Source: Octopus bimaculoides
Taxonomy: Eukaryota
NCBI RefSeq assembly: GCF_001194135.2
Contig: NC_068992.1
Span: forward strand, 3,121,287-3,185,286
Reading direction: 5' to 3'
Length of the DNA: 64,000 nt
Part shown: positions 19,521 to 59,760 of the stretch, in pieces
Position numbering within the stretch: position 1 is the first letter of the stretch
Layout of the letters: each line of letters opens with the position of its first letter
Position numbers and translations under genes: made by a program
Notes under the pieces: model-generated
Databases searched by the model: none
What the model saw: only the letters and a program-made list of their open reading frames with translations
What the model was told of the DNA's origin: nothing

Positions 19521-20132
19521 TTTTTAAAATTATTCTAGGTTCGAAAGAATACGTGCATAATGATATGCAGAAGAGGCGAATTTAAGACAGAGTGCTGTAG
19601 AATTTATGGATGTCGTAGCTAAGTCTCTTGACTGGCAACAACGGATTAATTAAACATTTTAAGAGATTCAATTAATTTGCACATCATGGACCATAAGTTG
19701 AGTTGAAAATGTAAACGCAGATAATTGTTTCGAAATGGTGCTCCGCCTACGTAGTTGAAAGTCAAAACGGATTAATTCGTTTAAAATAATATTTAAACTA
19801 ATAATTTAATTTAAATTAATACAACTTAATTATTCTATTAATTATAATTTCTCTTTGACTTTTGGTTATATAGGAGGTACTCACTGTGAAACTATTATCC
19901 ATATTGTCTGCCGGACTTTAACTGAGTGGAAATGTTTTTTAATAGTGTTTAACTAAATGCTGTTTCTTTAAATATAAAATTAACGATCCATATTCAAAGT
20001 TCTACGAACTCACTAACAAAATATTTCCTTCTCAACTGATTTCCCACTACATTTTCCCCTTATTCATCACGTTAGAGACGCACTCTGTCCAACTCAAATT
20101 TAATAGTATCTTTGCAATATAGCTTAAACATC

Positions 20133-20349
20133 AAGGCGGCGAACTACCAGAAACGTTAGCACGCTGGGCGAAATGCTTAGCGGTATTTCGTCTGTCTTTA
20201 TGTTCTGAGTTCAAATTCCGCCGAGGTTAACTTTGCCTTTCGCCCTTTCAGGGTTGATAAATTACGTACCAGTTGTGTACTGGATTAGATCTAATCGACT
20301 GGGGCCCTCCCCAAAAACTTCGGGCCTTGTGCCTAGAGTGGAAAAGAAT
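20133..20349 (+). mobile_element. SINE family B, full length
   Basis: aaggcggcgaactaccagaaacgttagcacg head, B-box-like gagttcaaattcc, tail gcctagagtggaaaagaat. Confidence 0.9.
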
Positions 20350-20355
20350 CTTTTA

Positions 20356-20574
20356 AACGCGACGAGCTGGCAGAATCGATAGCACGCCAGGCGAAAAGCT
20401 TAGCGGTATTTCGTTTGTCTTTACGCTCTGAGTTCAAATTCCGCCGAGGTCGACTTTGCCTTTCGTCCTTCCGGGGTCAATAAATTAAGTACCAGTTGCG
20501 TACTGGGTCGATCTAATCGACTGGCTCCCCTCCCCATAACATTTCGGGCTTTGTTCCCAGAGTAGAACAGAATA
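20356..20574 (+). mobile_element. SINE family B, full length, head-to-tail with the previous copy
   Basis: gcgacgagctggcagaatcg head through agagtagaacagaata tail. Confidence 0.9.
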
Positions 20575-20721
20575 TTTCTTAAGTATCTAAAATTTTCCTT
20601 GAAATGGCAATGAAAGACTATATTTTTTATAAACATATTTAGGAATGTATATGTATGTGTATATATGTATATTTATATCTATATATATATACATATATAC
20701 ATTTAAGCACGTATATGTGCA

Positions 20722-33643: not shown

Positions 33644-33888
33644 ACTCATTCTCTCTCTTTTTTGTGTCTCCATTTCTGCCCCCCTCTCTCTCTCTGTGTA
33701 CACACACACACATATATAAACAGATAGACAGACAGACACATTGAAGGATGGAAGGATAGAAAAATAGAGAGAGCGATAGAGACAGACAGACAAATTATAA
33801 TTGTTAATGCTGAAACAATGCGAAATGAAATATAAAAGTGAACAAAAAGTGAATACAGAACAAATGTCGAAGTTTCCACCAAGTATTT

Positions 33889-33926
33889 CTTCAATATTTC
33901 GGAGTTAGGACCCCTTCGTCAGGACA
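33889..33926 (-). ncRNA. Minimal hammerhead-like motif (CUGACGA-A family)
   Basis: Minus: tgtc CTGACGA a gggg tcctaa ctcc GAAA ta TT gaag. One extra A after A9, 4-bp stem II, AUAU palindrome, stem I 3/4. Confidence 0.4.
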
Positions 33927-35904
33927 TGTGGAGAAATGGGAGAGGGAATAAAGCTACTGCCGTTGCTCAGATATGTGAGAGAAGGTAGTAACATGCGCAG
34001 ATTGGTGTTGTTATGGTAGCCAGTCTGCTTCGAGTAGCTCTTGTTTTATGCTAGTTTTAACTTACTAATTAAGACATCTATAGAACTCATCAGAGCTGAC
34101 AAAATTAAGCATCTTTGAGCTTCTTGTTAAGCCACATTAATTGCTACTTTAATTATAGAGATAAAAGTGTTTCGCGTTTTCAAAGCATATGGAGTTTGCC
34201 ATCGTAAACTGGAGTTCCAAAATTTTATTCCAAGATTACAAAGGTACCATGTAGTCTATAATTACGCTGTTAAGTCATCAGCTGATAAAAATGTAATATA
34301 TGAAGCTATCTCCTCATGTATTTAAGCCGAAGTCATAAACAAGACAGTCGTATTTCGAAGAACTAATTTTTCCACAGCATCAAAACGCTACTATATTTTG
34401 CAGCTTGTTAATCCTGCGACACCAAATAAGAAACGAGTTGAAGCAACATTTGTTGAAGTAGTCAATGCTGTTTCTTTGCTATTAGCCATAATGGCACCAA
34501 CCAATACAAACGGTCACTAAATGAGTTGGCAAATCACTAGTTAAACCAATTAAAGCAAACCAGCTAACAATACCAAAAGTAGCTGAACAACTCAGGGCTA
34601 TCTCGTTTAATGAATGTTTAGACCTTAGCAAATGCAATAAAACATCAACAGTAAGTCTTTCCTTTTTTAGGTAAGCATAAACTGTTTGCTTCTTTGATGT
34701 TTTGGCACTTTGATGCTTTTCATTACAGAAACCAGCCACCGTTCGATTGCAATAATCACTAGCTTTCCGTTGGTGGCAAAATTAATTAGACTAGAAAAAT
34801 CTAATACAGCATCGGGTCAAATAATTTGAAAATCGCTTTTAAACTTTACGCCGTATTTCTGTGTCCTTTAGAAATATAGAACTCTTCCCACCGGTGCGTC
34901 AAAATGAAACAGATATAGTGCCAACTCTTCATTTGTTTGTTTTCGCTTGATAATCAGCTTTTATTTAATACTTTATGTTCAATTTGTTGGTATTTTTATT
35001 TTTAAAATGCTTTAGAAAAGTGAATCATATTGTTTGTAAAGGAAAGCGTATTGAATTTTATATTGCCAAATATGATTGTTTTGACGCAAACAAATATAAG
35101 ACAAAACGGAAATAATTCATTTGAGTGAATCTTCAACCAAGTAGATAGTCTCAGTTGGCTAAAATATGAACAATAGAATAAAGCGACTCTCCAACAGCAA
35201 CAGCAACAATAATGGTGTTTGAAATCTCAATATGTGAAATTACAATTAGTTACAAAAATAATAAAAGCAACAAAATTAATTTATTCTGAGTGTTCACAAA
35301 TGCTGAGGGAAGTGGTTTTGTTTCACGTGATCTAGTTTTTCCGGCGCCCTTACTAGACAATTCTCGTCTGCCAATGATATAAATATAAGTGCTTTTATGC
35401 TCCATTCTTCCATATGAGAGGCCCTTTCAATGTAAATAACTAAGTATTCGGTGTTTCAACAACATCCACGTTAAGTTAGACAGGAAGATGGTATTTCAGT
35501 AGTAATTCTACTGTATCACTTTGTACCAGCAAGAGCAGAGAACAAATATAAGCAGCCATCTCACTCATCAACAAAACTGTGTACACTGTGATTTTGTGGG
35601 CGATGCCCTTATAGTTCAGCCCAGGTGTCATAAGACTGCTCAAACATTCCTAACATAATTTATACCACAATAGCAACAATATATTAAAAAATATCTGAAC
35701 TATATCAGAATCCAAAATCACAACAGGTTCAGTGCCCGTACACCCACGCACATAATGACACACACCTACATGTATTGTACGTACGTGCATGTATAAGTGC
35801 ATACTCATGTATATATTTCTGCGTGTGTTATGGCATTTATGAAGAACAAATGACATTGGTAACACAAGGACCAAGAGTTTCATGCCAGAGAACTCCAGGA
35901 CAAC

Positions 35905-52480: not shown

Positions 52481-53482
52481 TATTGGGTTAGCAACTAATT
52501 TCCCGCCGTTTTTTTTAAATTTTGGAATTTATTTTTTTCGAGAATTCTATTTTGGAATCATTTTGGAATCTATTTTGTTTTGGTTTTTTTCTAGTTAATT
52601 TTAGTTAATTTTTGTTTATTTTCAGATCATTATAATGGAATGTCAAACGAGCATTTTCGACACCTTCTTTTTGCTTTTAATCAAGGCTCTAAGGCCAAAA
52701 AAGCTGCTCGCCACATTTGTGCTGTGTATAGAGAGGGTGCCATAGCTGAAAGAACCGCTCGTGATTGGTATGCCAAGATCAAAAATGGAAATTTTGACCT
52801 CAAAGACGCACCGAGTTCTGGCCGTCGAGTTGAGTTCGATGAAGATCGATTAAACCAACTTTTGCACGAAAATTCTCGTCAAACGACAAAGGAACTGCCA
52901 GAGAAAAGGGAATGTTCTCACACTGCTGTAGAGAAACATCTTCACTCGATGGGAAAGGTTCAGACGTATGGAGCATGGGTTCCGTATGCTTTAAGTGACA
53001 ACAACAAAAATCAACGAGCCACAATCTCCGCTGGTTTGCTTGCTCGTCACCGCTCAACTCATGGACACAAGCAACGATTTCTTTACCGAATCGTTACTGG
53101 CGACGAAAAATGGTGCCTGTACATCAATATGAAGCAGCGTAAGGAATGGCTTAGCCCCGGTAAACAAGCGACACCGCGCGTGAAACAAGATCTTCATCCG
53201 CGTAAAACGATGTTGTGTGTATGGTGGGACTGGGAAAGGATTATCCAATACGAATTGCTTGAACGGAACCAGAGGGTCAATGTAGAACTATGTTCAACAG
53301 ATGAAATGACTCAACACGGCTATTCAAGAGAAAAGACCTAATCGCCAGCAAGGAGTTTTTCTGCTGCACGACAACGCCCGCTCTCATATCGCCAATATGA
53401 CCAAGGAAGCCATTCAAACGCATGGCTGGGAAGTACTGTCACCCCCCCCCCCGCCGTACTCTTCTGATTTGGCTCTTCTGAC
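52481..53482 (+). mobile_element. mariner (DD34D-type) transposon, 3' end missing
   Basis: TA-ttgggttagcaactaatttcccgccg left end. Motifs WVPYAL, IVTGDEKW, MLCVWWD, HDNAR, then PPYSSDLAL before an abrupt junction. Confidence 0.9.
52640..53341 (+). CDS. Truncated mariner transposase ORF, 233 aa (DNA-binding domain plus first catalytic Asp; frameshift after NVEL)
   Basis: ORF track. The second catalytic motif HDNAR lies downstream in another frame (~53370). Confidence 0.6.
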   Translation: MSNEHFRHLLFAFNQGSKAKKAARHICAVYREGAIAERTARDWYAKIKNGNFDLKDAPSSGRRVEFDEDRLNQLLHENSRQTTKELPEKRECSHTAVEKHLHSMGKVQTYGAWVPYALSDNNKNQRATISAGLLARHRSTHGHKQRFLYRIVTGDEKWCLYINMKQRKEWLSPGKQATPRVKQDLHPRKTMLCVWWDWERIIQYELLERNQRVNVELCSTDEMTQHGYSREKT

Positions 53483-53789: not shown

Positions 53790-55201
53790 TCATATACGTA
53801 TATCAAAGTGTGGGTGAGTCTGCCTTTCTCTGGAAATAGATATATATTTGGCAATGAAAATTCTACTTGTATAGAAAATCATTAAAATTTTACTCCCACC
53901 TATAGTTTATGATCATCTTTATCAACAAATTTGTAAGTCTTTGAAAGTTCATATATGACCGATAAAAGAAAAGAAATCAGACAAGTGTATCAAATTTTCG
54001 CAACAACAATACAAAAATTTTATAGCCGCCTGATAATATCAATCCAATTTGGTCCGAATTTATGGTAAATCTTCTGTGTATTAGTTACGCTTTCCTCATT
54101 TGACAGAACTTCTAAGCAGAGATCTATTGAATACATTTCTACCTATTTCTTAGAACTAAACAAAACATTTACTTCTGATCTTTCCGTTTCTCCAATTAGC
54201 ATTTTTGTAGATCAAAGAAAACATTTTTTTAAACTTCTTATAAAGATAAAAGTTACGAGCTTGAAATTTGCAAAAATCAATTAAGAACATTCCAAGCATT
54301 TGGCAGTAATCTCCCAAAGTAAGAAAGTGGCTTCGTTTAACGCGTCTTTTGACATTTTTGCGCTGGTACATAGAAACGACATTGTCTTGTAACAAATTAT
54401 AACTGTCCCAGATATCGTGTTATATTAACGTTTCCCATTTCTATTTTAAACAGGTTTTGTTGTAAGTTTTAGTGATGGATATTTCGTCGGTCTCGACGAT
54501 GAGTATCTGGTTGTTTGACCGACTAAATTGCTACTCAAGAAATTAATCCATAACGAAATGAGTATTTTACAGACTTGGACAATTAAAGTAATTATCATTC
54601 CACGATCAGCACAATACCGGAATGAAAGTGAACCTTTGAATTATCGGTAAAACCCGGAGAAAACTTTTGCCCCTAATACTACAAGAACTAGGGAACAATT
54701 CTTCACGATCTCTTTCTTCCTGGATTGGACCTATGTCGTCAAAATTTCAACAATGTATTTCAAAATGATATGTTTCGAAATGATATGCATAGTTAGATTG
54801 TGGTAACACTTTAACTCAGAACGCAGCGAACAGAACGAGTATCGAAAGGCATTTTAGTCAATGATCTATCGATTCTACAAGTTTACTTCTTCGTAAACTC
54901 TTGGTTCGATAATGATACGAGTGAGTGGTCTAATGCGGGTCTTGTATTAGTATCATGCATATATATATTAGAATGAGATAACAAAAACAAGGCTGCGAGG
55001 AGTTTTCAGGACATTTATAATGAAATAGTAATACAGCTGAGACGGTGTGAGAAAATATTTGAGTTCGAATTATTGTGGAAAAGGAGGAGATATAGAATAT
55101 AGAGGGAAATAAGAGAATGAAATTAGAAATAAGATATATAAAGATATTGTAGTTGCAGTTATATATATATATACATACAAGTTAATCTTTAAGGAGAATA
55201 G

Positions 55202-55287
55202 TATTGACTTCGAAGTTTCGGCCAGCTTAGCCATCTTCGGACGGTCCGAAGATGGCTTAGCTGGCCGAAACTTCAGTTATCGTCAAT
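55202..55287. ncRNA. Palindromic double-hammerhead-like element (30-bp stem with one mismatch, 3-nt loop)
   Basis: 55212-55241 pairs with 55245-55274 at 29/30. Plus: gacggt CCGAAGA t ggc ttagctg gcc GAAA cttcag TT atcgtc. Minus: gaccgt CCGAAGA t ggc taagctg gcc GAAA cttcgaag TC aatac. Confidence 0.6.
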
Positions 55288-55502
55288 GTGTGTGTGTGTT
55301 TAAAAGCAGATATTTGCTAGTCATGGCGATTGGTAGAGACAGAGCATAAGAGTTATAAACAGTCGGCCTGGGTGAGGGGAGGTAATCTGCTGCATATTAA
55401 ATGTAACGATATGCTCAGCCAAATAATATCGTCTTTTTAATGTGAATGAACATTTCGTTGTATAAATTTTCTTGAATGTGCTAAAACGAATAAATGTGAT
55501 TC

Positions 55503-56830: not shown

Positions 56831-57715
56831 GTGATAATATCCTTGGTGTTCCCGATAAGTCAAGTTTACGAGGACCGAGTGTGCGTCTATTTCTTCTGGC
56901 GATTACATAAACACTTGAAAGTGTCAAACAATGGAGCATTCAACCAAATCCTCCACGATTCCGAGTGACAGCCATATTTTATGATTCTTAACAGTCATTT
57001 ATCACGTGGACGTTTCTCTCTAATCTCGATATTTAATTCAGCATCCAAGCAAAAGCAAGATTATAATTCATTATCGCGACATTTGGCGTATAATTCACTA
57101 CGTTCTTAATTTGAGAATTTAGCTGAATTCTTAATTCATTTTCTACGCTTCAATTTGCTTTGGTGCAGTTTTTCCAATCTGGATTTGACATCCTGTTTTC
57201 TAAATGGATCTGTGTAATGTCTATATGTATGTGTGTGTAATACTATATGTATGTGTGTGTGTATGAAGAAAAACCGTTGAGTTGACTACATCTGTTGACG
57301 TGCGATATTGTTAGCAACGGTAAGAAGGATAAAGAAAAAGATAAGACAGAGACTAAGACAGAGCGAGAGAGAAAGAGAGCGGAGAATGAAAAAGGCAAGA
57401 GAACAAGTGAGGTTGAGACAGAGTTGGATAGACGGAATGGATTAGCTGATTTTATGACATCAACGCTTGTTTGTTCATTATTCCTAGTTTACAACTTCAT
57501 GTCATCCTTATAAATAAGATGTTTGTATGTCCAGCAACAATATCTATAATTACTTCCAGTCTAGTTTAACTCGTTATTTAAAGGTGCTAACTTCAGGCAA
57601 ATAGGAAATAAATACAGCGCAATGTTTTAATAAAGACTGGGTTTGATTTAATAATTCTTTAGTTTGTTTGTATCAGTAGAATCGTTTAACATTATCTCAC
57701 AAGGCGTTTAATATT

Positions 57716-57913
57716 CTTTTCTACTCAAACCACAAGGCCCGAAATTTGTTGGGAGGGAGCTATTCGATTAAGCCGACCCCAGTATGCAACTGTTACTTAA
57801 TTTATCGACCCTGAAAGGATGAAAGGTAAAGTCGACCTCGACGGAATTTTAACTCAGAACGTAAAGACAGACGAAATACCGCTAAGCATTCCGCCCGTCG
57901 TGCTAACGTTTCT
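57716..57913 (-). mobile_element. SINE family B lacking ~16 nt of head
   Basis: Tail ttctactcaaaccacaagg; ends at gtgctaacgtttct. Confidence 0.85.
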
Positions 57914-58146
57914 TATTTCTTTATTGCCCACAAGGGGCTAAACATAGAGGGGACAAACAAGGACAGACAAAGGGATTAATTCGATTAGATCGACCTCAGT
58001 ACGTAACTGGTACTTATTTAATCGACCCTGAAAGGATGAAAGGCAAAGTAGACCTCGGCGGAATTTGAACTCAGAACGTAGCAGTAGACGAAATACCGCT
58101 AAGCATTTCGCCCGGCGTGCTAACGTTTCTGCCAGCTCGCCGCCTT
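57909..58146 (-). mobile_element. SINE family B, alternative tail (tttcttatttctttattgcccacaaggggc), full head
   Basis: Shares core and head with the other copies; ends gccagctcgccgcctt. Confidence 0.85.
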
Positions 58147-58913
58147 ACAAAGCATTTAATATTACCTTTATAATGCCACGTTTCCAGAGTTCACCTGAAG
58201 AGCTGAGCATCAAAATCTTTCTGGTCTTCAGCTTACGTCTTGGCACATTCTTCTTCGCCGCCTGCTCCATTAGCTATTACTTTGTCCTATTAAGCGATCT
58301 TTACAGTCATATGAACCGTTTGAAAATGTATATTTTAATAGTTTGCTTTAGCGTATATATCTCCACATATAATTCAACTTACGCAGTTTAACATTCTCAT
58401 TTAACTACATCACTAAATTCATTTACACGTACAGGTTCACATCTGACCGCTTCCTGACCTTTTTTCGTTTAATCTTGTATTTATTTTTTTAGTCATTCAT
58501 CGCTGTTTTACATTTCTTAATTTTCTATTTACTATTAATAAATGTATAATTAATTCTTGATCAGCTGTTAAGGAATGTTGCCAAATTCTAACAGCAGCAG
58601 CAGCAGAGGCCAGATTTACTCTTACTGAAGACGTTTACTGATGGCAATGAGACCATCTACATTGTTATTGTCACGCATCATCGCTATTAGCACTATTATA
58701 TAATATAATTAGTAGCAATAGTAATTGCTACTAATTATATCACTACCCTCACGTCCCCTATTTACAACACTGCCAACTCATCGTTACACTCACTCGTAAT
58801 CCCCACTTGCTTCCATATTTCTCTGCCCATCTGTGTCTATTTGCTTCCGGTATCAATGCAGTGGTCTCAGTAATAGAAGTCATGATGGTAATATTGGTGA
58901 GGATGGTAATAAT

Positions 58914-59190: not shown

Positions 59191-59760
59191 TGGAGTGAAT
59201 GAGATTCTCGTCGTGCAAGACAGTCGTAGCGAAGGCAATCAGTCAAGGAGTCGGGAAGCCTGATATAAAGTCACCACAGGGGAAACTTAGTAAAGTAGCA
59301 AATCTTCATTTGCTTAAAAGGTTAACCGACTGTTACGACATAATTAGGAAGAAAATACAAATGATCCCGGAGGGGCTGACCAATGGTAACACTTTCTCGT
59401 TCTACAAACATGATGAAACAAAAATCCCTAAAAACGACGGATCCATAACATGCCTTACAACAATGCACGATATTCTTACATCCGTCCTAATGAAACGCAC
59501 GTATACTTTGTTCATTAACTACACAATTTTCCCTGATGAACAAAGATAGTGGAAATGAGGTCATATAGATGTAGGGATCAACTGTTAATTAACATGAGGA
59601 TTCTTGATGATTGTCACAAAAGACAGCAAAATCTTTCAATGGCCTGGATAGACTTTAGTTTTTAACAGTCTTGCCCACAGCTTTATAGAGAAATGCGTAG
59701 AGATACTCAAAATTTCAATAACAATCAAGAACATTTTCAATTCTAGTCATGAAGAACGAC
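59191..59760 (+). pseudogene. R4/Dong-clade RT N-terminal fragment (different subfamily from 46.6 kb)
   Basis: IPEGLTNGNT; PKNDGSITCLTTMHDILT; IFPDEQ; NLSMAWIDF. Confidence 0.8.

What the first reader, a model, noticed from the sequence alone, without database searches (positions are those of the whole stretch)
55202..55287. ~86-bp palindrome carrying a hammerhead-like motif on both strands
Seen: a 29/30-bp hairpin whose centre doubles as the 5' stem-I strand for each polarity. Plus strand: 6-bp stem I gacggt/atcgtc, core CCGAAGA plus an extra U, stem II ggc/gcc, then GAAA-C..G-UU. Minus strand: GAAA-CUUCGAAG-UC with a GUC triplet. The two copies imply the consensus gacggt CCGAAGA t ggc taagctg gcc GAAA cttcgaag TC accgtc. 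All four half-sites in the two copies have C at core position 4, so it looks like a family trait. Established: ribozymes in both polarities typify viroid-like RNAs, and one extra nucleotide after A9 is tolerated. Inference: a tiny non-coding ambisense-ribozyme repeat that can switch between an inert hairpin and a cleaving fold; I do not know of a description of it.
Basis: partly seen in the sequence, partly recalled or inferred. Interest (0 to 1): 0.85.

Follow-up and report, generated by a model that had tools for sequence, protein, structure and literature searches.

The report
Octopod repeat with mirrored hammerhead-like motif
The palindrome is real, but it is a truncated copy of a dispersed non-coding octopus repeat in which a degenerate Penelope-type hammerhead-like motif sits head-to-head with its own inverted copy, so it is an ordinary transposon relic, not a two-strand ribozyme switch.

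Summary
The palindrome is confirmed. Its arms are 55212-55242 and 55244-55274, with 30 of 31 bases matching. It is the only long complex palindrome in the window.

No half-site is complete:
- All four arms in the window have C at core position 4.
- The plus-strand site has a damaged helix III.
- The minus-strand site has no stem I.

The palindrome is not a tiny stand-alone element. It belongs to a repeat family of at least 240 bp, with copies at window 44053-44290 and in Octopus bimaculoides (L015:8309-8540). In those two copies the sequence runs on for about 170 nt on one side only. Copies are 65-76% alike and abut (TA)n/(TG)n microsatellites.

The motif has the hallmarks of Penelope-type minimal hammerheads: an extra U after A9, G10.1-C11.1, and a palindromic helix III. 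The third copy carries a canonical CUGACGA core. Five arms give no covariation support.

As RNA, the plus strand folds into a -59 kcal/mol hairpin, 42 kcal/mol more stable than the cleaving fold; the minus strand forms the same hairpin.

Best reading (about 0.5): a relic of a Penelope-like or retrozyme-type retroposon with an inverted duplication. The motif on the second strand is simply the mirror image. Interest is low.

The parts
55176..55242 (-). Copy 1, left arm. Read on the minus strand it is the hammerhead-like half-site plus about 30 nt of downstream sequence ending in ...CTTGTA.
   Evidence: The outer part is homologous to both arms of copy 2.
55243..55243 (.). The single unpaired base (G) at the centre of the palindrome.
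55244..55287 (+). Copy 1, right arm. It is the plus-strand half-site, cut off after GTCAAT by a (GT)6 run.
55234..55240 (-). Minus-strand core box CCGAAGA (C at position 4). The extra U is at 55233.
55220..55232 (-). Minus-strand stem II region GGCUAAGCUGGCC: 4 bp including one G-U, with a 5-nt loop.
55206..55219 (-). Minus-strand GAAA box (55216-55219), palindromic helix III/loop CUUCGAAG (55208-55215) and UC of the GUC triplet (55206-55207). No stem I 3' strand follows, because 6 nt are missing relative to copy 2.
55240..55253 (+). Plus-strand stem I 5' strand GACGGU (55240-55245, spanning the palindrome centre), core CCGAAGA (55246-55252) and extra U (55253).
55254..55284 (+). Plus-strand stem II GGCUUAGCUGGCC (55254-55266), GAAA (55267-55270), damaged helix III C-UUCA-G (55271-55276), UU (55277-55278) and stem I 3' strand AUCGUC (55279-55284).
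55160..55173 (.). (TA)7 run next to the left end of copy 1.
55288..55299 (.). (GT)6 run directly abutting the right end of copy 1.
44053..44119 (-). Copy 2, left arm. On the minus strand it reads CCGAUGU-U-...-GAAA-CUUCGAAG-UC-ACUGUC. Stem I pairs at 5 of 6 positions. Stem II does not pair.
44121..44199 (+). Copy 2, right arm. It reads CCGAUGA-U-...-GAAA-CUUCAAAG-UG. G17 makes it incompetent as a hammerhead.
44200..44290 (+). Copy 2, the body of the family unit. It continues on this side only, is homologous to L015:8412-8540, and ends in (TA)n(TG)n.

Best explanation
**What it is.** The palindrome at 55176-55287 is a truncated copy of a dispersed, non-coding octopod repeat family whose unit is at least 240 bp.

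**The motif.** One end of the unit carries a single Penelope-type minimal hammerhead-like motif. It reads C-Y-G-A-N-G-A, then an extra U, a 13-nt stem II region and GAAA. These are followed by a 1-bp helix III closed by the palindromic loop UUCGAA, and then GUC. This motif is joined head-to-head to an inverted copy of itself and of the roughly 40 nt that follow it.

**Why both strands.** The motif on the other strand is therefore a mirror image made by the inverted duplication. It is not a second ribozyme that has been independently maintained.

**Origin (inferred).**
- The family is a relic of a Penelope-like or retrozyme-type non-autonomous retroposon.
- It spread by target-primed reverse transcription into (TA)n/(TG)n microsatellites.
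- The inverted arm arose once in a master copy, or by fold-back or two-strand priming. It is eroded or truncated to different extents in each copy.

**Behaviour as RNA.** The plus strand folds into a hairpin of -59 kcal/mol that buries the whole motif, and the minus strand forms the same hairpin at about -60. No self-cleavage is expected from this locus. If transcribed, it would behave as long double-stranded RNA.
For: **Shown by the sequence and tools**
- The palindrome itself.
- Three family copies in about 130 kb of octopod DNA: two in the window, and one in O. bimaculoides CM046615.1 (L015).
- In copy 2 and L015, homology continues for about 170 nt on one side of the centre only. L015 has an asymmetric junction that lacks about 20 nt at the centre.
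- The arms within copy 2 (66%) and within L015 (74%) are no more alike than arms of different copies (65-76%). The palindrome is therefore an old family trait.

**Hammerhead-like register across the arms**
- The spacing from core to GAAA is 21 nt in all 5 arms that keep the core.
- C3, G5, A6 and G8 are present in 5 of 5 arms, and the extra U in 5 of 5.
- GAAAC is present in 6 of 6 arms.
- N7 is the most variable core position (A, A, T, T, C).
- Position 4 is C in four arms and T in one.

**Statistics**
- Descriptor hits expected per window: 0.003 with no core mismatch and 0.05 with one.
- With a helix-III palindrome of 6 nt or more there were 0 hits in 300 shuffles.

**Traits matching published Penelope-type minimal hammerheads** (PMC4209133)
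- The G10.1-C11.1 pair.
- A palindromic helix III or loop.
- Pairs of motifs on opposite strands.

**Context**
- Both ends of copy 1, and the ends of copy 2, abut dinucleotide runs. Only 7% of window positions lie within 12 nt of such a run.
- Penelope-like elements (PLEs) show strong microsatellite insertion bias, heavy 5' truncation and adjacent inverted copies, and they occur in Octopus (PMC8557442).
- A PLE protein cleaves and extends both DNA strands at AT-rich sites (PMC11167929).
- A canonical minimal hammerhead lies in the same window at 33887-33928 (-). It shares local similarity with the family.

**Energetics**
- For the plus strand, the hairpin is -59.4 kcal/mol and the hammerhead-competent fold -17.3 kcal/mol.
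- The full minus-strand RNA folds into the same hairpin at -60.0 kcal/mol.
Against: - No reverse transcriptase or GIY-YIG reading frame, pseudo-LTR or tandem arrangement lies next to any of the three copies.
- Core position 4 is C in 4 of 5 arms. U4C considerably lowers activity in vitro (PMC3088659).
- Stem II pairs only in copy 1.
- Pair counts on five arms do not exceed shuffled controls: 70.9% of cells paired, matched or beaten by 241 of 500 shuffles.
- CGAAG and CCGAAR recur within the arm. This may inflate a chance resemblance to the GA-rich hammerhead boxes.
- The ends of the unit vary on both sides, so orientation and mechanism (3'-anchored retroposition or something else) are not settled.
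- Only three copies could be examined.
Confidence: 0.5

Rival explanations
1. An ordinary interspersed repeat (SINE-like element or LINE 3' end) with a long terminal hairpin. Its resemblance to a hammerhead is coincidental and comes from a reiterated CGAAG / CCGAAR / TTCGAA motif.
For: - The core carries C4.
- Stem II is unpaired in copy 2 and only partly paired in L015.
- There is no covariation signal.
- Non-hammerhead blocks such as AATACTATTCT.GTTAAAGAATAA are conserved as well as the core.
- In the isolated half-site, the core GAAG simply pairs with CUUC of the supposed helix III.
- Rfam hammerhead models give no match.
- LINE reverse-transcriptase fragments and SINE-like repeats are abundant in the window.
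Against: - The full descriptor match is very unlikely by chance.
- The match carries traits that the descriptor did not require but Penelope-type hammerheads have: U after A9, present in 5 of 5 arms, and a 21-nt spacing kept in all arms.
- N7 is the one freely varying core position.
- One copy has the canonical CUGACGA core.
- The Rfam negative is uninformative, because a canonical minimal hammerhead in the window is missed too.
Confidence: 0.3
2. One reading: a functional ambisense ribozyme element, with competent hammerheads in both polarities, that toggles between an inert hairpin and a cleaving fold. This would resemble the hammerhead arm of avsunviroids.
For: - An idealised consensus palindrome would encode a full type I motif on each strand, with the centre supplying the 5' strand of stem I.
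- Stem I pairs at 6 of 6 positions in the copy-1 plus site and at 5 of 6 in the copy-2 minus site, with one change on both sides.
- U4C is tolerated in a viroid in vivo (PMC3088659).
- From my own knowledge: the plus and minus hammerhead domains of PLMVd and CChMVd lie opposite each other in one hairpin arm.
Against: - No real copy has a competent motif on both strands, or even a fully intact one on either strand.
- The hairpin is favoured by 42 kcal/mol for the plus strand. It would form co-transcriptionally, because the antisense arm is transcribed first.
- Plus and minus transcripts would anneal to each other rather than form hammerhead dimers.
- Copies are unit-length, dispersed and not permuted or tandem, as a circular RNA template would predict.
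- In copy 2 and L015 the element is asymmetric.
Confidence: 0.04
3. A palindromic miniature DNA transposon of the Tc1/mariner type (comparable to MADE1), made of two joined terminal inverted repeats with a TA target-site duplication.
For: - The outer ends of the arms read TA|CAAGT... in the copy-1 left arm and the copy-2 right arm.
- Mariner and Tc1-like remnants are present in the window.
- A near-perfect palindrome of about 110-150 bp fits this kind of element.
Against: - In copy 2 and L015 the homology continues about 130 nt past the CAAGT point on one side only. The unit is therefore not bounded by the palindrome.
- The far ends have no matching inverted repeat.
- The arm ends differ in all three copies.
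- The arms show no similarity to the mariner copy in the window.
Confidence: 0.06
4. A hairpin small-RNA locus (a microRNA-like or endogenous siRNA precursor) derived from the repeat.
For: - The hairpin has a stem of more than 31 bp and about -60 kcal/mol on both strands.
- The only Rfam matches are microRNA-precursor models.
- From my own knowledge: palindromic transposon relics have given rise to microRNA families, for example MADE1 and mir-548.
Against: - All matches are far below the gathering scores (28.5 bits against 67) and reflect the hairpin shape only.
- The older copies have decayed hairpins, so the structure has not been conserved.
- No expression data are available.
Confidence: 0.04

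Closest known systems
Minimal type I hammerhead motifs of Penelope-like elements (Cervera & de la Pena 2014, PMC4209133; reviewed in PMC6765202)
   Same: - Type I layout with the CUGANGA...GAAA boxes.
- An unpaired nucleotide between A9 and G10.1.
- The G10.1-C11.1 pair.
- A 1-bp helix III with a palindromic loop, which implies action as a dimer.
- Mostly solitary, highly variable genomic copies.
- Pairs on opposite strands have been reported.
- Animal (here mollusc) host, and microsatellite or AT-rich insertion sites.
   Different: - C instead of U at core position 4 in four of five arms.
- The two opposite-strand copies abut directly to form one palindrome, rather than lying 100-700 bp apart.
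- No reverse transcriptase/GIY-YIG reading frame or pseudo-LTR is nearby.
- Stem II is not maintained in the older copies.
Non-LTR retrozymes and hammerhead-bearing SINE-like elements (Schistosoma Sm-alpha and Sj-alpha; PMC7229834; bioRxiv 10.64898/2026.07.22.740005)
   Same: Short, non-coding, AT-rich, non-autonomous repeats that carry one type I hammerhead and are thought to be mobilised by Penelope-like or LINE machinery.
   Different: Retrozymes are tandem arrays of 150-400-bp units. Here the copies are single and dispersed, each with an inverted partial duplication, and no tandem unit was seen.
Complex tandem or inverted insertions of Penelope-like elements (Craig et al. 2021, PMC8557442; Frangieh et al. 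2024, PMC11167929)
   Same: - Head-to-head inverted copies.
- Strong 5' truncation and short tails.
- (TA)n or (CA)n target bias.
- An endonuclease that nicks and extends both DNA strands.
   Different: In Penelope-like elements the inverted copy keeps the 3' end of the element. Here the inverted arm covers only the 48-75 nt next to the junction, while the other side runs on for at least 170 nt.
Hammerhead arm of avsunviroids with ribozymes of both polarities (recalled from my own knowledge, not tested here)
   Same: A quasi-palindromic hairpin in which the plus and minus hammerhead sequences pair with each other and are inactive in the most stable fold.
   Different: Those are replicating circular RNAs in which both ribozymes are intact. 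Here the sequences are decayed genomic DNA copies with no competent pair.

Membership tests
Hammerhead ribozyme, Penelope-type minimal type I | Core box C3-U4-G5-A6-N7-G8-A9 | tested here: not met
   Copy 1 has CCGAAGA on both strands. Copy 2 has CCGAUGA and CCGAUGU. Only the L015 left arm has the canonical CUGACGA.
Hammerhead ribozyme, Penelope-type minimal type I | G12-A13-A14 plus A15.1 (the GAAA box) at the correct distance from the core | tested here: met
   GAAAC is present in 6 of 6 arms. The distance from core to GAAA is 21 nt in all 5 arms that keep the core.
Hammerhead ribozyme, Penelope-type minimal type I | Helix II closed by G10.1-C11.1, with an unpaired nucleotide after A9 | tested here: inconclusive
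   The extra U is present in 5 of 5 arms. Helix II forms with 4 bp in both copy-1 arms and with 3 of 4 pairs in L015, and does not form in copy 2.
Hammerhead ribozyme, Penelope-type minimal type I | Short helix III with a palindromic loop, followed by a cleavable N-U-H triplet | tested here: inconclusive
   - CUUCGAAG followed by GUC is found in the copy-1 minus and copy-2 minus sites.
- The copy-1 plus site has a 2-nt deletion and GUU.
- The copy-2 plus site has GUG, which is not cleavable.
Hammerhead ribozyme, Penelope-type minimal type I | Helix I flanking the core and the cleavage site | tested here: inconclusive
   It pairs at 6 of 6 positions in the copy-1 plus site and 5 of 6 in the copy-2 minus site. 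It is absent from the copy-1 minus and copy-2 plus sites. The 5' strand is supplied by the palindrome centre.
Hammerhead ribozyme, Penelope-type minimal type I | Covariation that supports the three helices | tested here: inconclusive
   With five arms, 70.9% of cells are paired (241 of 500 shuffles do as well). Two pairs change on both sides (60 of 500 shuffles).
Hammerhead ribozyme (Rfam models) | A match to an Rfam hammerhead covariance model | tested here: not met
   No hammerhead match at gathering score or at E<=10. A canonical minimal hammerhead at 33887-33928 is also missed, so the test is insensitive for this subtype.
Hammerhead ribozyme | Self-cleavage activity | not testable with these tools
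   This needs in vitro transcription and cleavage assays.
Penelope-like element or non-autonomous derivative | A reverse transcriptase + GIY-YIG reading frame, or pseudo-LTR/tandem structure, linked to the motif | tested here: not met
   There is no such reading frame or direct repeat next to copy 1, copy 2 or L015. A non-autonomous derivative is not excluded.
Penelope-like element or non-autonomous derivative | Insertion into microsatellite or AT-rich DNA, with inverted or truncated copies | tested here: met
   The ends of copies 1 and 2 abut (TA)n, (TG)n or (CA)n runs, against a 7% background. Head-to-head inverted arms and variable truncation are seen.
Non-LTR retrozyme | Tandem repeats of a 150-400-bp unit, each with a type I hammerhead | tested here: not met
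   Only single dispersed copies were found, with no direct repeat of the unit.
Miniature inverted-repeat DNA transposon | Terminal inverted repeats at both ends of the unit, plus a target-site duplication | tested here: not met
   The unit is asymmetric: the body lies on one side only in copy 2 and L015. Target-site duplications cannot be read inside microsatellites.
microRNA precursor families (Rfam) | A score at or above the family's gathering threshold | tested here: not met
   The best match is mir-232 at 28.5 bits against a threshold of 67.

The most novel reading that the evidence does not exclude
The family's master copy is a retroposon in which a Penelope-type hammerhead is deliberately built into a long hairpin with its own antisense copy. 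Both DNA strands then encode the motif, and the hairpin gates ribozyme activity or serves as the handle for the reverse transcriptase. This would be a genome-encoded counterpart of the avsunviroid hammerhead arm, with C4 as a lineage trait.
Probability: 0.07. Interest if true: 0.7.

Novelty: new member of a known kind. Interest (0 to 1): 0.25.

Why it matters
If the best reading holds, this adds an octopod example to the known link between minimal hammerhead motifs and Penelope-type retroposition. It also shows an extreme case of the inverted-copy arrangement, in which two motifs are fused into one palindrome inside a microsatellite.

The practical lesson concerns annotation. An inverted duplication of any strand-specific RNA motif will look "ambisense". 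Rfam's hammerhead models miss minimal Penelope-type motifs, so both positive and negative calls need family-level evidence.

It would matter more only if young copies prove to keep competent motifs on both strands, or if the hairpin proves to be required for mobilisation.

Tried and rejected
**Searches for more copies that found nothing useful**
- A pattern scan of viral contigs gave 14 hits, all chance matches inside phage coding sequence.
- Two metagenome pattern scans, each with 22-23 specified bases, gave 0 hits.
- I searched the protein database with the open reading frame that runs across the palindrome, hoping to reach spurious gene calls over other copies. No candidate was found.
- An exact look-up of the window's mariner ORF found nothing on record.

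**Partial success**
- Mariner homologues led to three O. bimaculoides loci (L015-L017). These yielded one further family copy.

**Dead ends**
- Two ENA loci (L018, L019) share only the mariner with the window and are not octopod.
- A look-up of an O. vulgaris protein failed.
- A search with a Penelope-like(?) N-terminal ORF from L016 returned a single short Logan contig.
- An nhmmer profile of the family found no further copies in 130 kb.
- tRNA scans found no tRNA-like head.
- No coding potential was found. The AUG formed by A9-U-G10.1 is present in 3 of 5 arms, and it opens no conserved frame.

**Considered and rejected**
- A MITE, because the unit is asymmetric.
- A tandem retrozyme, because there are no tandems.
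- A microRNA gene, because the scores are sub-threshold and the hairpin decays in older copies.

Full report

Yes, for the palindrome.
- Arms 55212-55242 and 55244-55274 are 31 nt long and 97% complementary, with one base between them.
- The 26-mer CCGAAGATGGCTTAGCTGGCCGAAAC is present on both strands, against 0 expected in shuffles.
- A scan for complex inverted repeats of 20 nt or more, with a spacer of at most 8 nt, finds this one and only one microsatellite-like other in 64 kb.

The pairing continues outward. ATTGAC and GTCAAT pair, and the left arm runs on to 55176. The feature is therefore larger than 55202-55287.

**2. It is one copy of a family, and the family is bigger than the palindrome.**

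A diverged second copy lies at about 44053-44290. It is 73% identical to copy 1 over 123 nt.

The window shares SINE-like and mariner repeats, at 75-90% identity, with Octopus bimaculoides GCA_001194135.2. The source is therefore an octopod.

In the three O. bimaculoides loci I could fetch (66 kb), there is a third copy at L015:8309-8540.

Copy 2 and L015 align at 77% mean column identity, gaps counted, across the 292-column alignment that covers the unit. Homology continues for about 170 nt beyond the palindrome centre on one side only.

The inverted arm covers only the 48-75 nt next to the junction. L015 has an asymmetric junction that lacks about 20 nt.

Copy 1 is cut short on both sides, by (TA)7 on the left and (GT)6 on the right.

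BLAST and an nhmmer profile find no other copy in the 130 kb available.

Arm-to-arm identity within copy 2 (66%) and within L015 (74%) is no higher than between copies (65-76%). Only copy 1's inner 31 nt are 97% identical. The inverted duplication is therefore an old family trait, and copy 1 is a young or recently homogenised member.

**3. How hammerhead-like is it?**

All five arms that keep the core align without gaps, with 21 nt from the first core base to GAAA:

| Arm | Upstream | Core | Extra nt | Stem II region | GAAA + C | Helix III | Triplet end | Next 6 nt |
|---|---|---|---|---|---|---|---|---|
| Copy 1, minus | GT | CCGAAGA | T | GGCTAAGCTGGCC | GAAAC | TTCGAAG | TC | AATACT |
| Copy 1, plus | GT | CCGAAGA | T | GGCTTAGCTGGCC | GAAAC | TTC--AG | TT | ATCGTC |
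| Copy 2, minus | CT | CCGATGT | T | GAGTCAACTGGCA | GAAAC | TTCGAAG | TC | ACTGTC |
| Copy 2, plus | GT | CCGATGA | T | CGGCTTGCCAGGG | GAAAC | TTCAAAG | TG | TTTGTT |
| L015, minus | GT | CTGACGA | T | GACTCAACAGGGC | GAAAC | CTTGAAG | TC | ACTATT |

Conservation across the arms:
- C3, G5, A6, G8 and the extra U are invariant.
- N7 is the most variable core position.
- GAAAC is present in 6 of 6 arms.
- Position 4 is C in four arms and T in one. C4-G5 is a CpG, so either state could be ancestral.

The extra nucleotide after A9, the G10.1-C11.1 pair and the palindromic helix III are exactly the traits reported for minimal hammerheads of Penelope-like elements. That study also reports pairs of motifs on opposite strands and very low activity in vitro (PMC4209133; PMC6765202).

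I wrote a descriptor with these traits and ran it on dinucleotide shuffles of the window. Expected hits per window:
- 0.003 with no core mismatch.
- 0.05 with one core mismatch.
- None in 300 shuffles with a helix-III palindrome of 6 nt or more.

A chance origin is therefore unlikely. One caution applies: CGAAG and CCGAAR recur inside the arm.

Evidence against a working ribozyme:
- No arm is intact. The defects are C4, the 2-nt deletion in helix III, the missing stem I strand, G17, and U at position 9 in the copy-2 minus arm.
- Stem II pairs only in copy 1.
- Pair counts on the five arms do not exceed shuffled controls.
- Perreault et al. note that U4C considerably lowers activity in vitro, although a viroid tolerates it (PMC3088659).

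Rfam gives no hammerhead match. It also misses a canonical minimal hammerhead that my descriptor found at 33887-33928 on the minus strand. That one reads CUGACGA-a-GGGGUccuaACUCC-GAAA-UA-UU. The Rfam negative is therefore uninformative.

That canonical motif also shares TGG..GAAACTTCGA with the family (equalled or beaten by 2-6 of 300 shuffles).

**4. Energetics.**
- The full-length RNA of either strand folds into the hairpin at about -60 kcal/mol.
- For the plus strand, forcing stems I and II and leaving the core unpaired gives -17.3 kcal/mol. The gap is 42 kcal/mol.
- Even an isolated or idealised half-site prefers to pair its core GAAG with CUUC of helix III.
- In any transcript that spans the palindrome, the antisense arm is made first, so the hairpin forms before the motif is complete.
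- Plus and minus transcripts are fully complementary to each other. They would anneal rather than form hammerhead dimers.

**5. Context.**
- Both ends of copy 1, and the ends of copy 2, abut (TA)n, (TG)n or (CA)n runs. Only 7% of window positions lie within 12 nt of such a run.
- No reverse transcriptase/GIY-YIG reading frame, pseudo-LTR or tandem unit lies next to any copy.
- There is no tRNA-like head.
- The AUG formed by A9-U-G10.1 recalls the anole Penelope-like element, whose reading frame starts at stem II (PMC11167929). Here it is present in only 3 of 5 arms and opens no conserved frame.

**6. What it most likely is.**

Shown:
- A palindrome formed by a head-to-head inverted duplication at one end of a dispersed non-coding repeat of at least 240 bp.
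- A Penelope-type hammerhead-like motif in each arm.
- An association with microsatellites.
- Variable truncation of the copies.

Inferred: the family is a relic of a Penelope-like or retrozyme-type non-autonomous retroposon. Published features of Penelope-like elements fit this:
- Hammerheads near the 3' end, heavy 5' truncation, adjacent inverted copies, short tails and (TA)n or (CA)n target bias. These elements are present in Octopus (PMC8557442).
- An endonuclease that nicks and extends both strands at AT-rich sites, with reverse transcription starting internally downstream of the hammerhead (PMC11167929).
- A 2026 preprint derives animal retrozymes from Penelope pseudo-LTRs.

I could not settle how the inverted arm arose. 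It may have formed once in a master copy, by fold-back of the cDNA end, or by priming on both strands. I also could not settle which way the unit is oriented.

One hint on orientation comes from the three arms on the minus strand of their sources, here called the "left" arms. They keep GUC in 3 of 3 cases and the perfect CUUCGAAG in 2 of 3. Their mirror arms have GUU, GUG and broken palindromes. This suggests that the left-arm strand is the sense strand and the other arm merely its complement.

**7. Comparison and membership.**

It works like, and probably derives from, a Penelope-type minimal hammerhead. I do not file copy 1 as a member, for four reasons:
- The canonical core is not met.
- Helices I and II are not maintained across copies.
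- Covariation is inconclusive.
- Activity is untestable here.

The features that define a Penelope-like element proper (coding region, pseudo-LTR) are not met. The features of retrozymes (tandems), MITEs (bounded terminal inverted repeats) and microRNA families (gathering score) are not met either.

**8. Verdict.**
- The interpretation as an ambisense ribozyme switch is not supported. The second-strand motif is a mirror image, and the hairpin wins by 42 kcal/mol.
- Novelty: a new member of a known kind.
- Interest is about 0.25.
- The most novel reading still open is a retroposon that deliberately pairs its hammerhead with an antisense copy, like a viroid hammerhead arm. I give it about 7%.

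Noticed in passing
window 33887-33928, minus strand: A canonical Penelope-type minimal hammerhead: catgtc-CUGACGA-a-GGGGUccuaACUCC-GAAA-UA-UU|gaagaa. It is expected 0.003 times per window by shuffles. Rfam hammerhead models do not report it even at E<=10. About 24 nt downstream it has TGGTGGAAACTTCGA, which resembles the palindrome family's TGGCCGAAACTTCGA. No inverted partner and no other copy were found in the 130 kb available.
   Followed up: partly
window 52462-53473 (+), ORF 52640-53341: A mariner Mos1-like transposon copy with a 233-aa open frame (Pfam HTH_48 and Transposase_1). It is 84-86% identical to copies in O. bimaculoides. It is also 82-86% identical at protein level to copies in a nematode, a mite and a bee, which suggests a horizontally spread lineage.
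   Followed up: partly
window 46666-46920, 47570-47812 and 59199-59546 (+): Fragments of a non-LTR (LINE) reverse transcriptase reading frame (weak RVT_1 match), in two separate copies.
   Followed up: no
window 11504-11898, 20130-20576, 46340-46556, 57711-58151: Copies of octopod SINE-like repeats, shared with the O. bimaculoides loci at 75-90% identity. These identify the source as an octopod.
   Followed up: partly
L016 (O. bimaculoides CM046611.1) 4894-5110 (-) and 5492-5713 (+): The same roughly 70-aa ORF fragment (..IVPADKTGNLYIGDNTLYNSLLRKEIL..) is encoded on both strands about 380 bp apart. This is an inverted duplication of what may be the N-terminal region of a Penelope-like ORF. The identity is unverified: there is no Pfam match and only one database homologue.
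   Followed up: partly
window 40965-41515 (+) and 44450-45155 (+): Decayed Tc1/mariner-type transposase remnants (for example ..WPPNIPDYNPFDYYVWG..). The second lies just beyond the microsatellite that flanks copy 2 and is repeated in L016.
   Followed up: no
window-wide, for example 6.2, 17.2-17.8, 23.8-24.6, 29.0-29.7 and 51.2-51.8 kb: Assembly gaps (3,219 N in total) sit almost always inside (TA)n/(TG)n arrays. Pure dinucleotide runs of 10 nt or more make up about 4% of the called bases. This is typical of a short-read cephalopod assembly and could hide further repeat copies.
   Followed up: no
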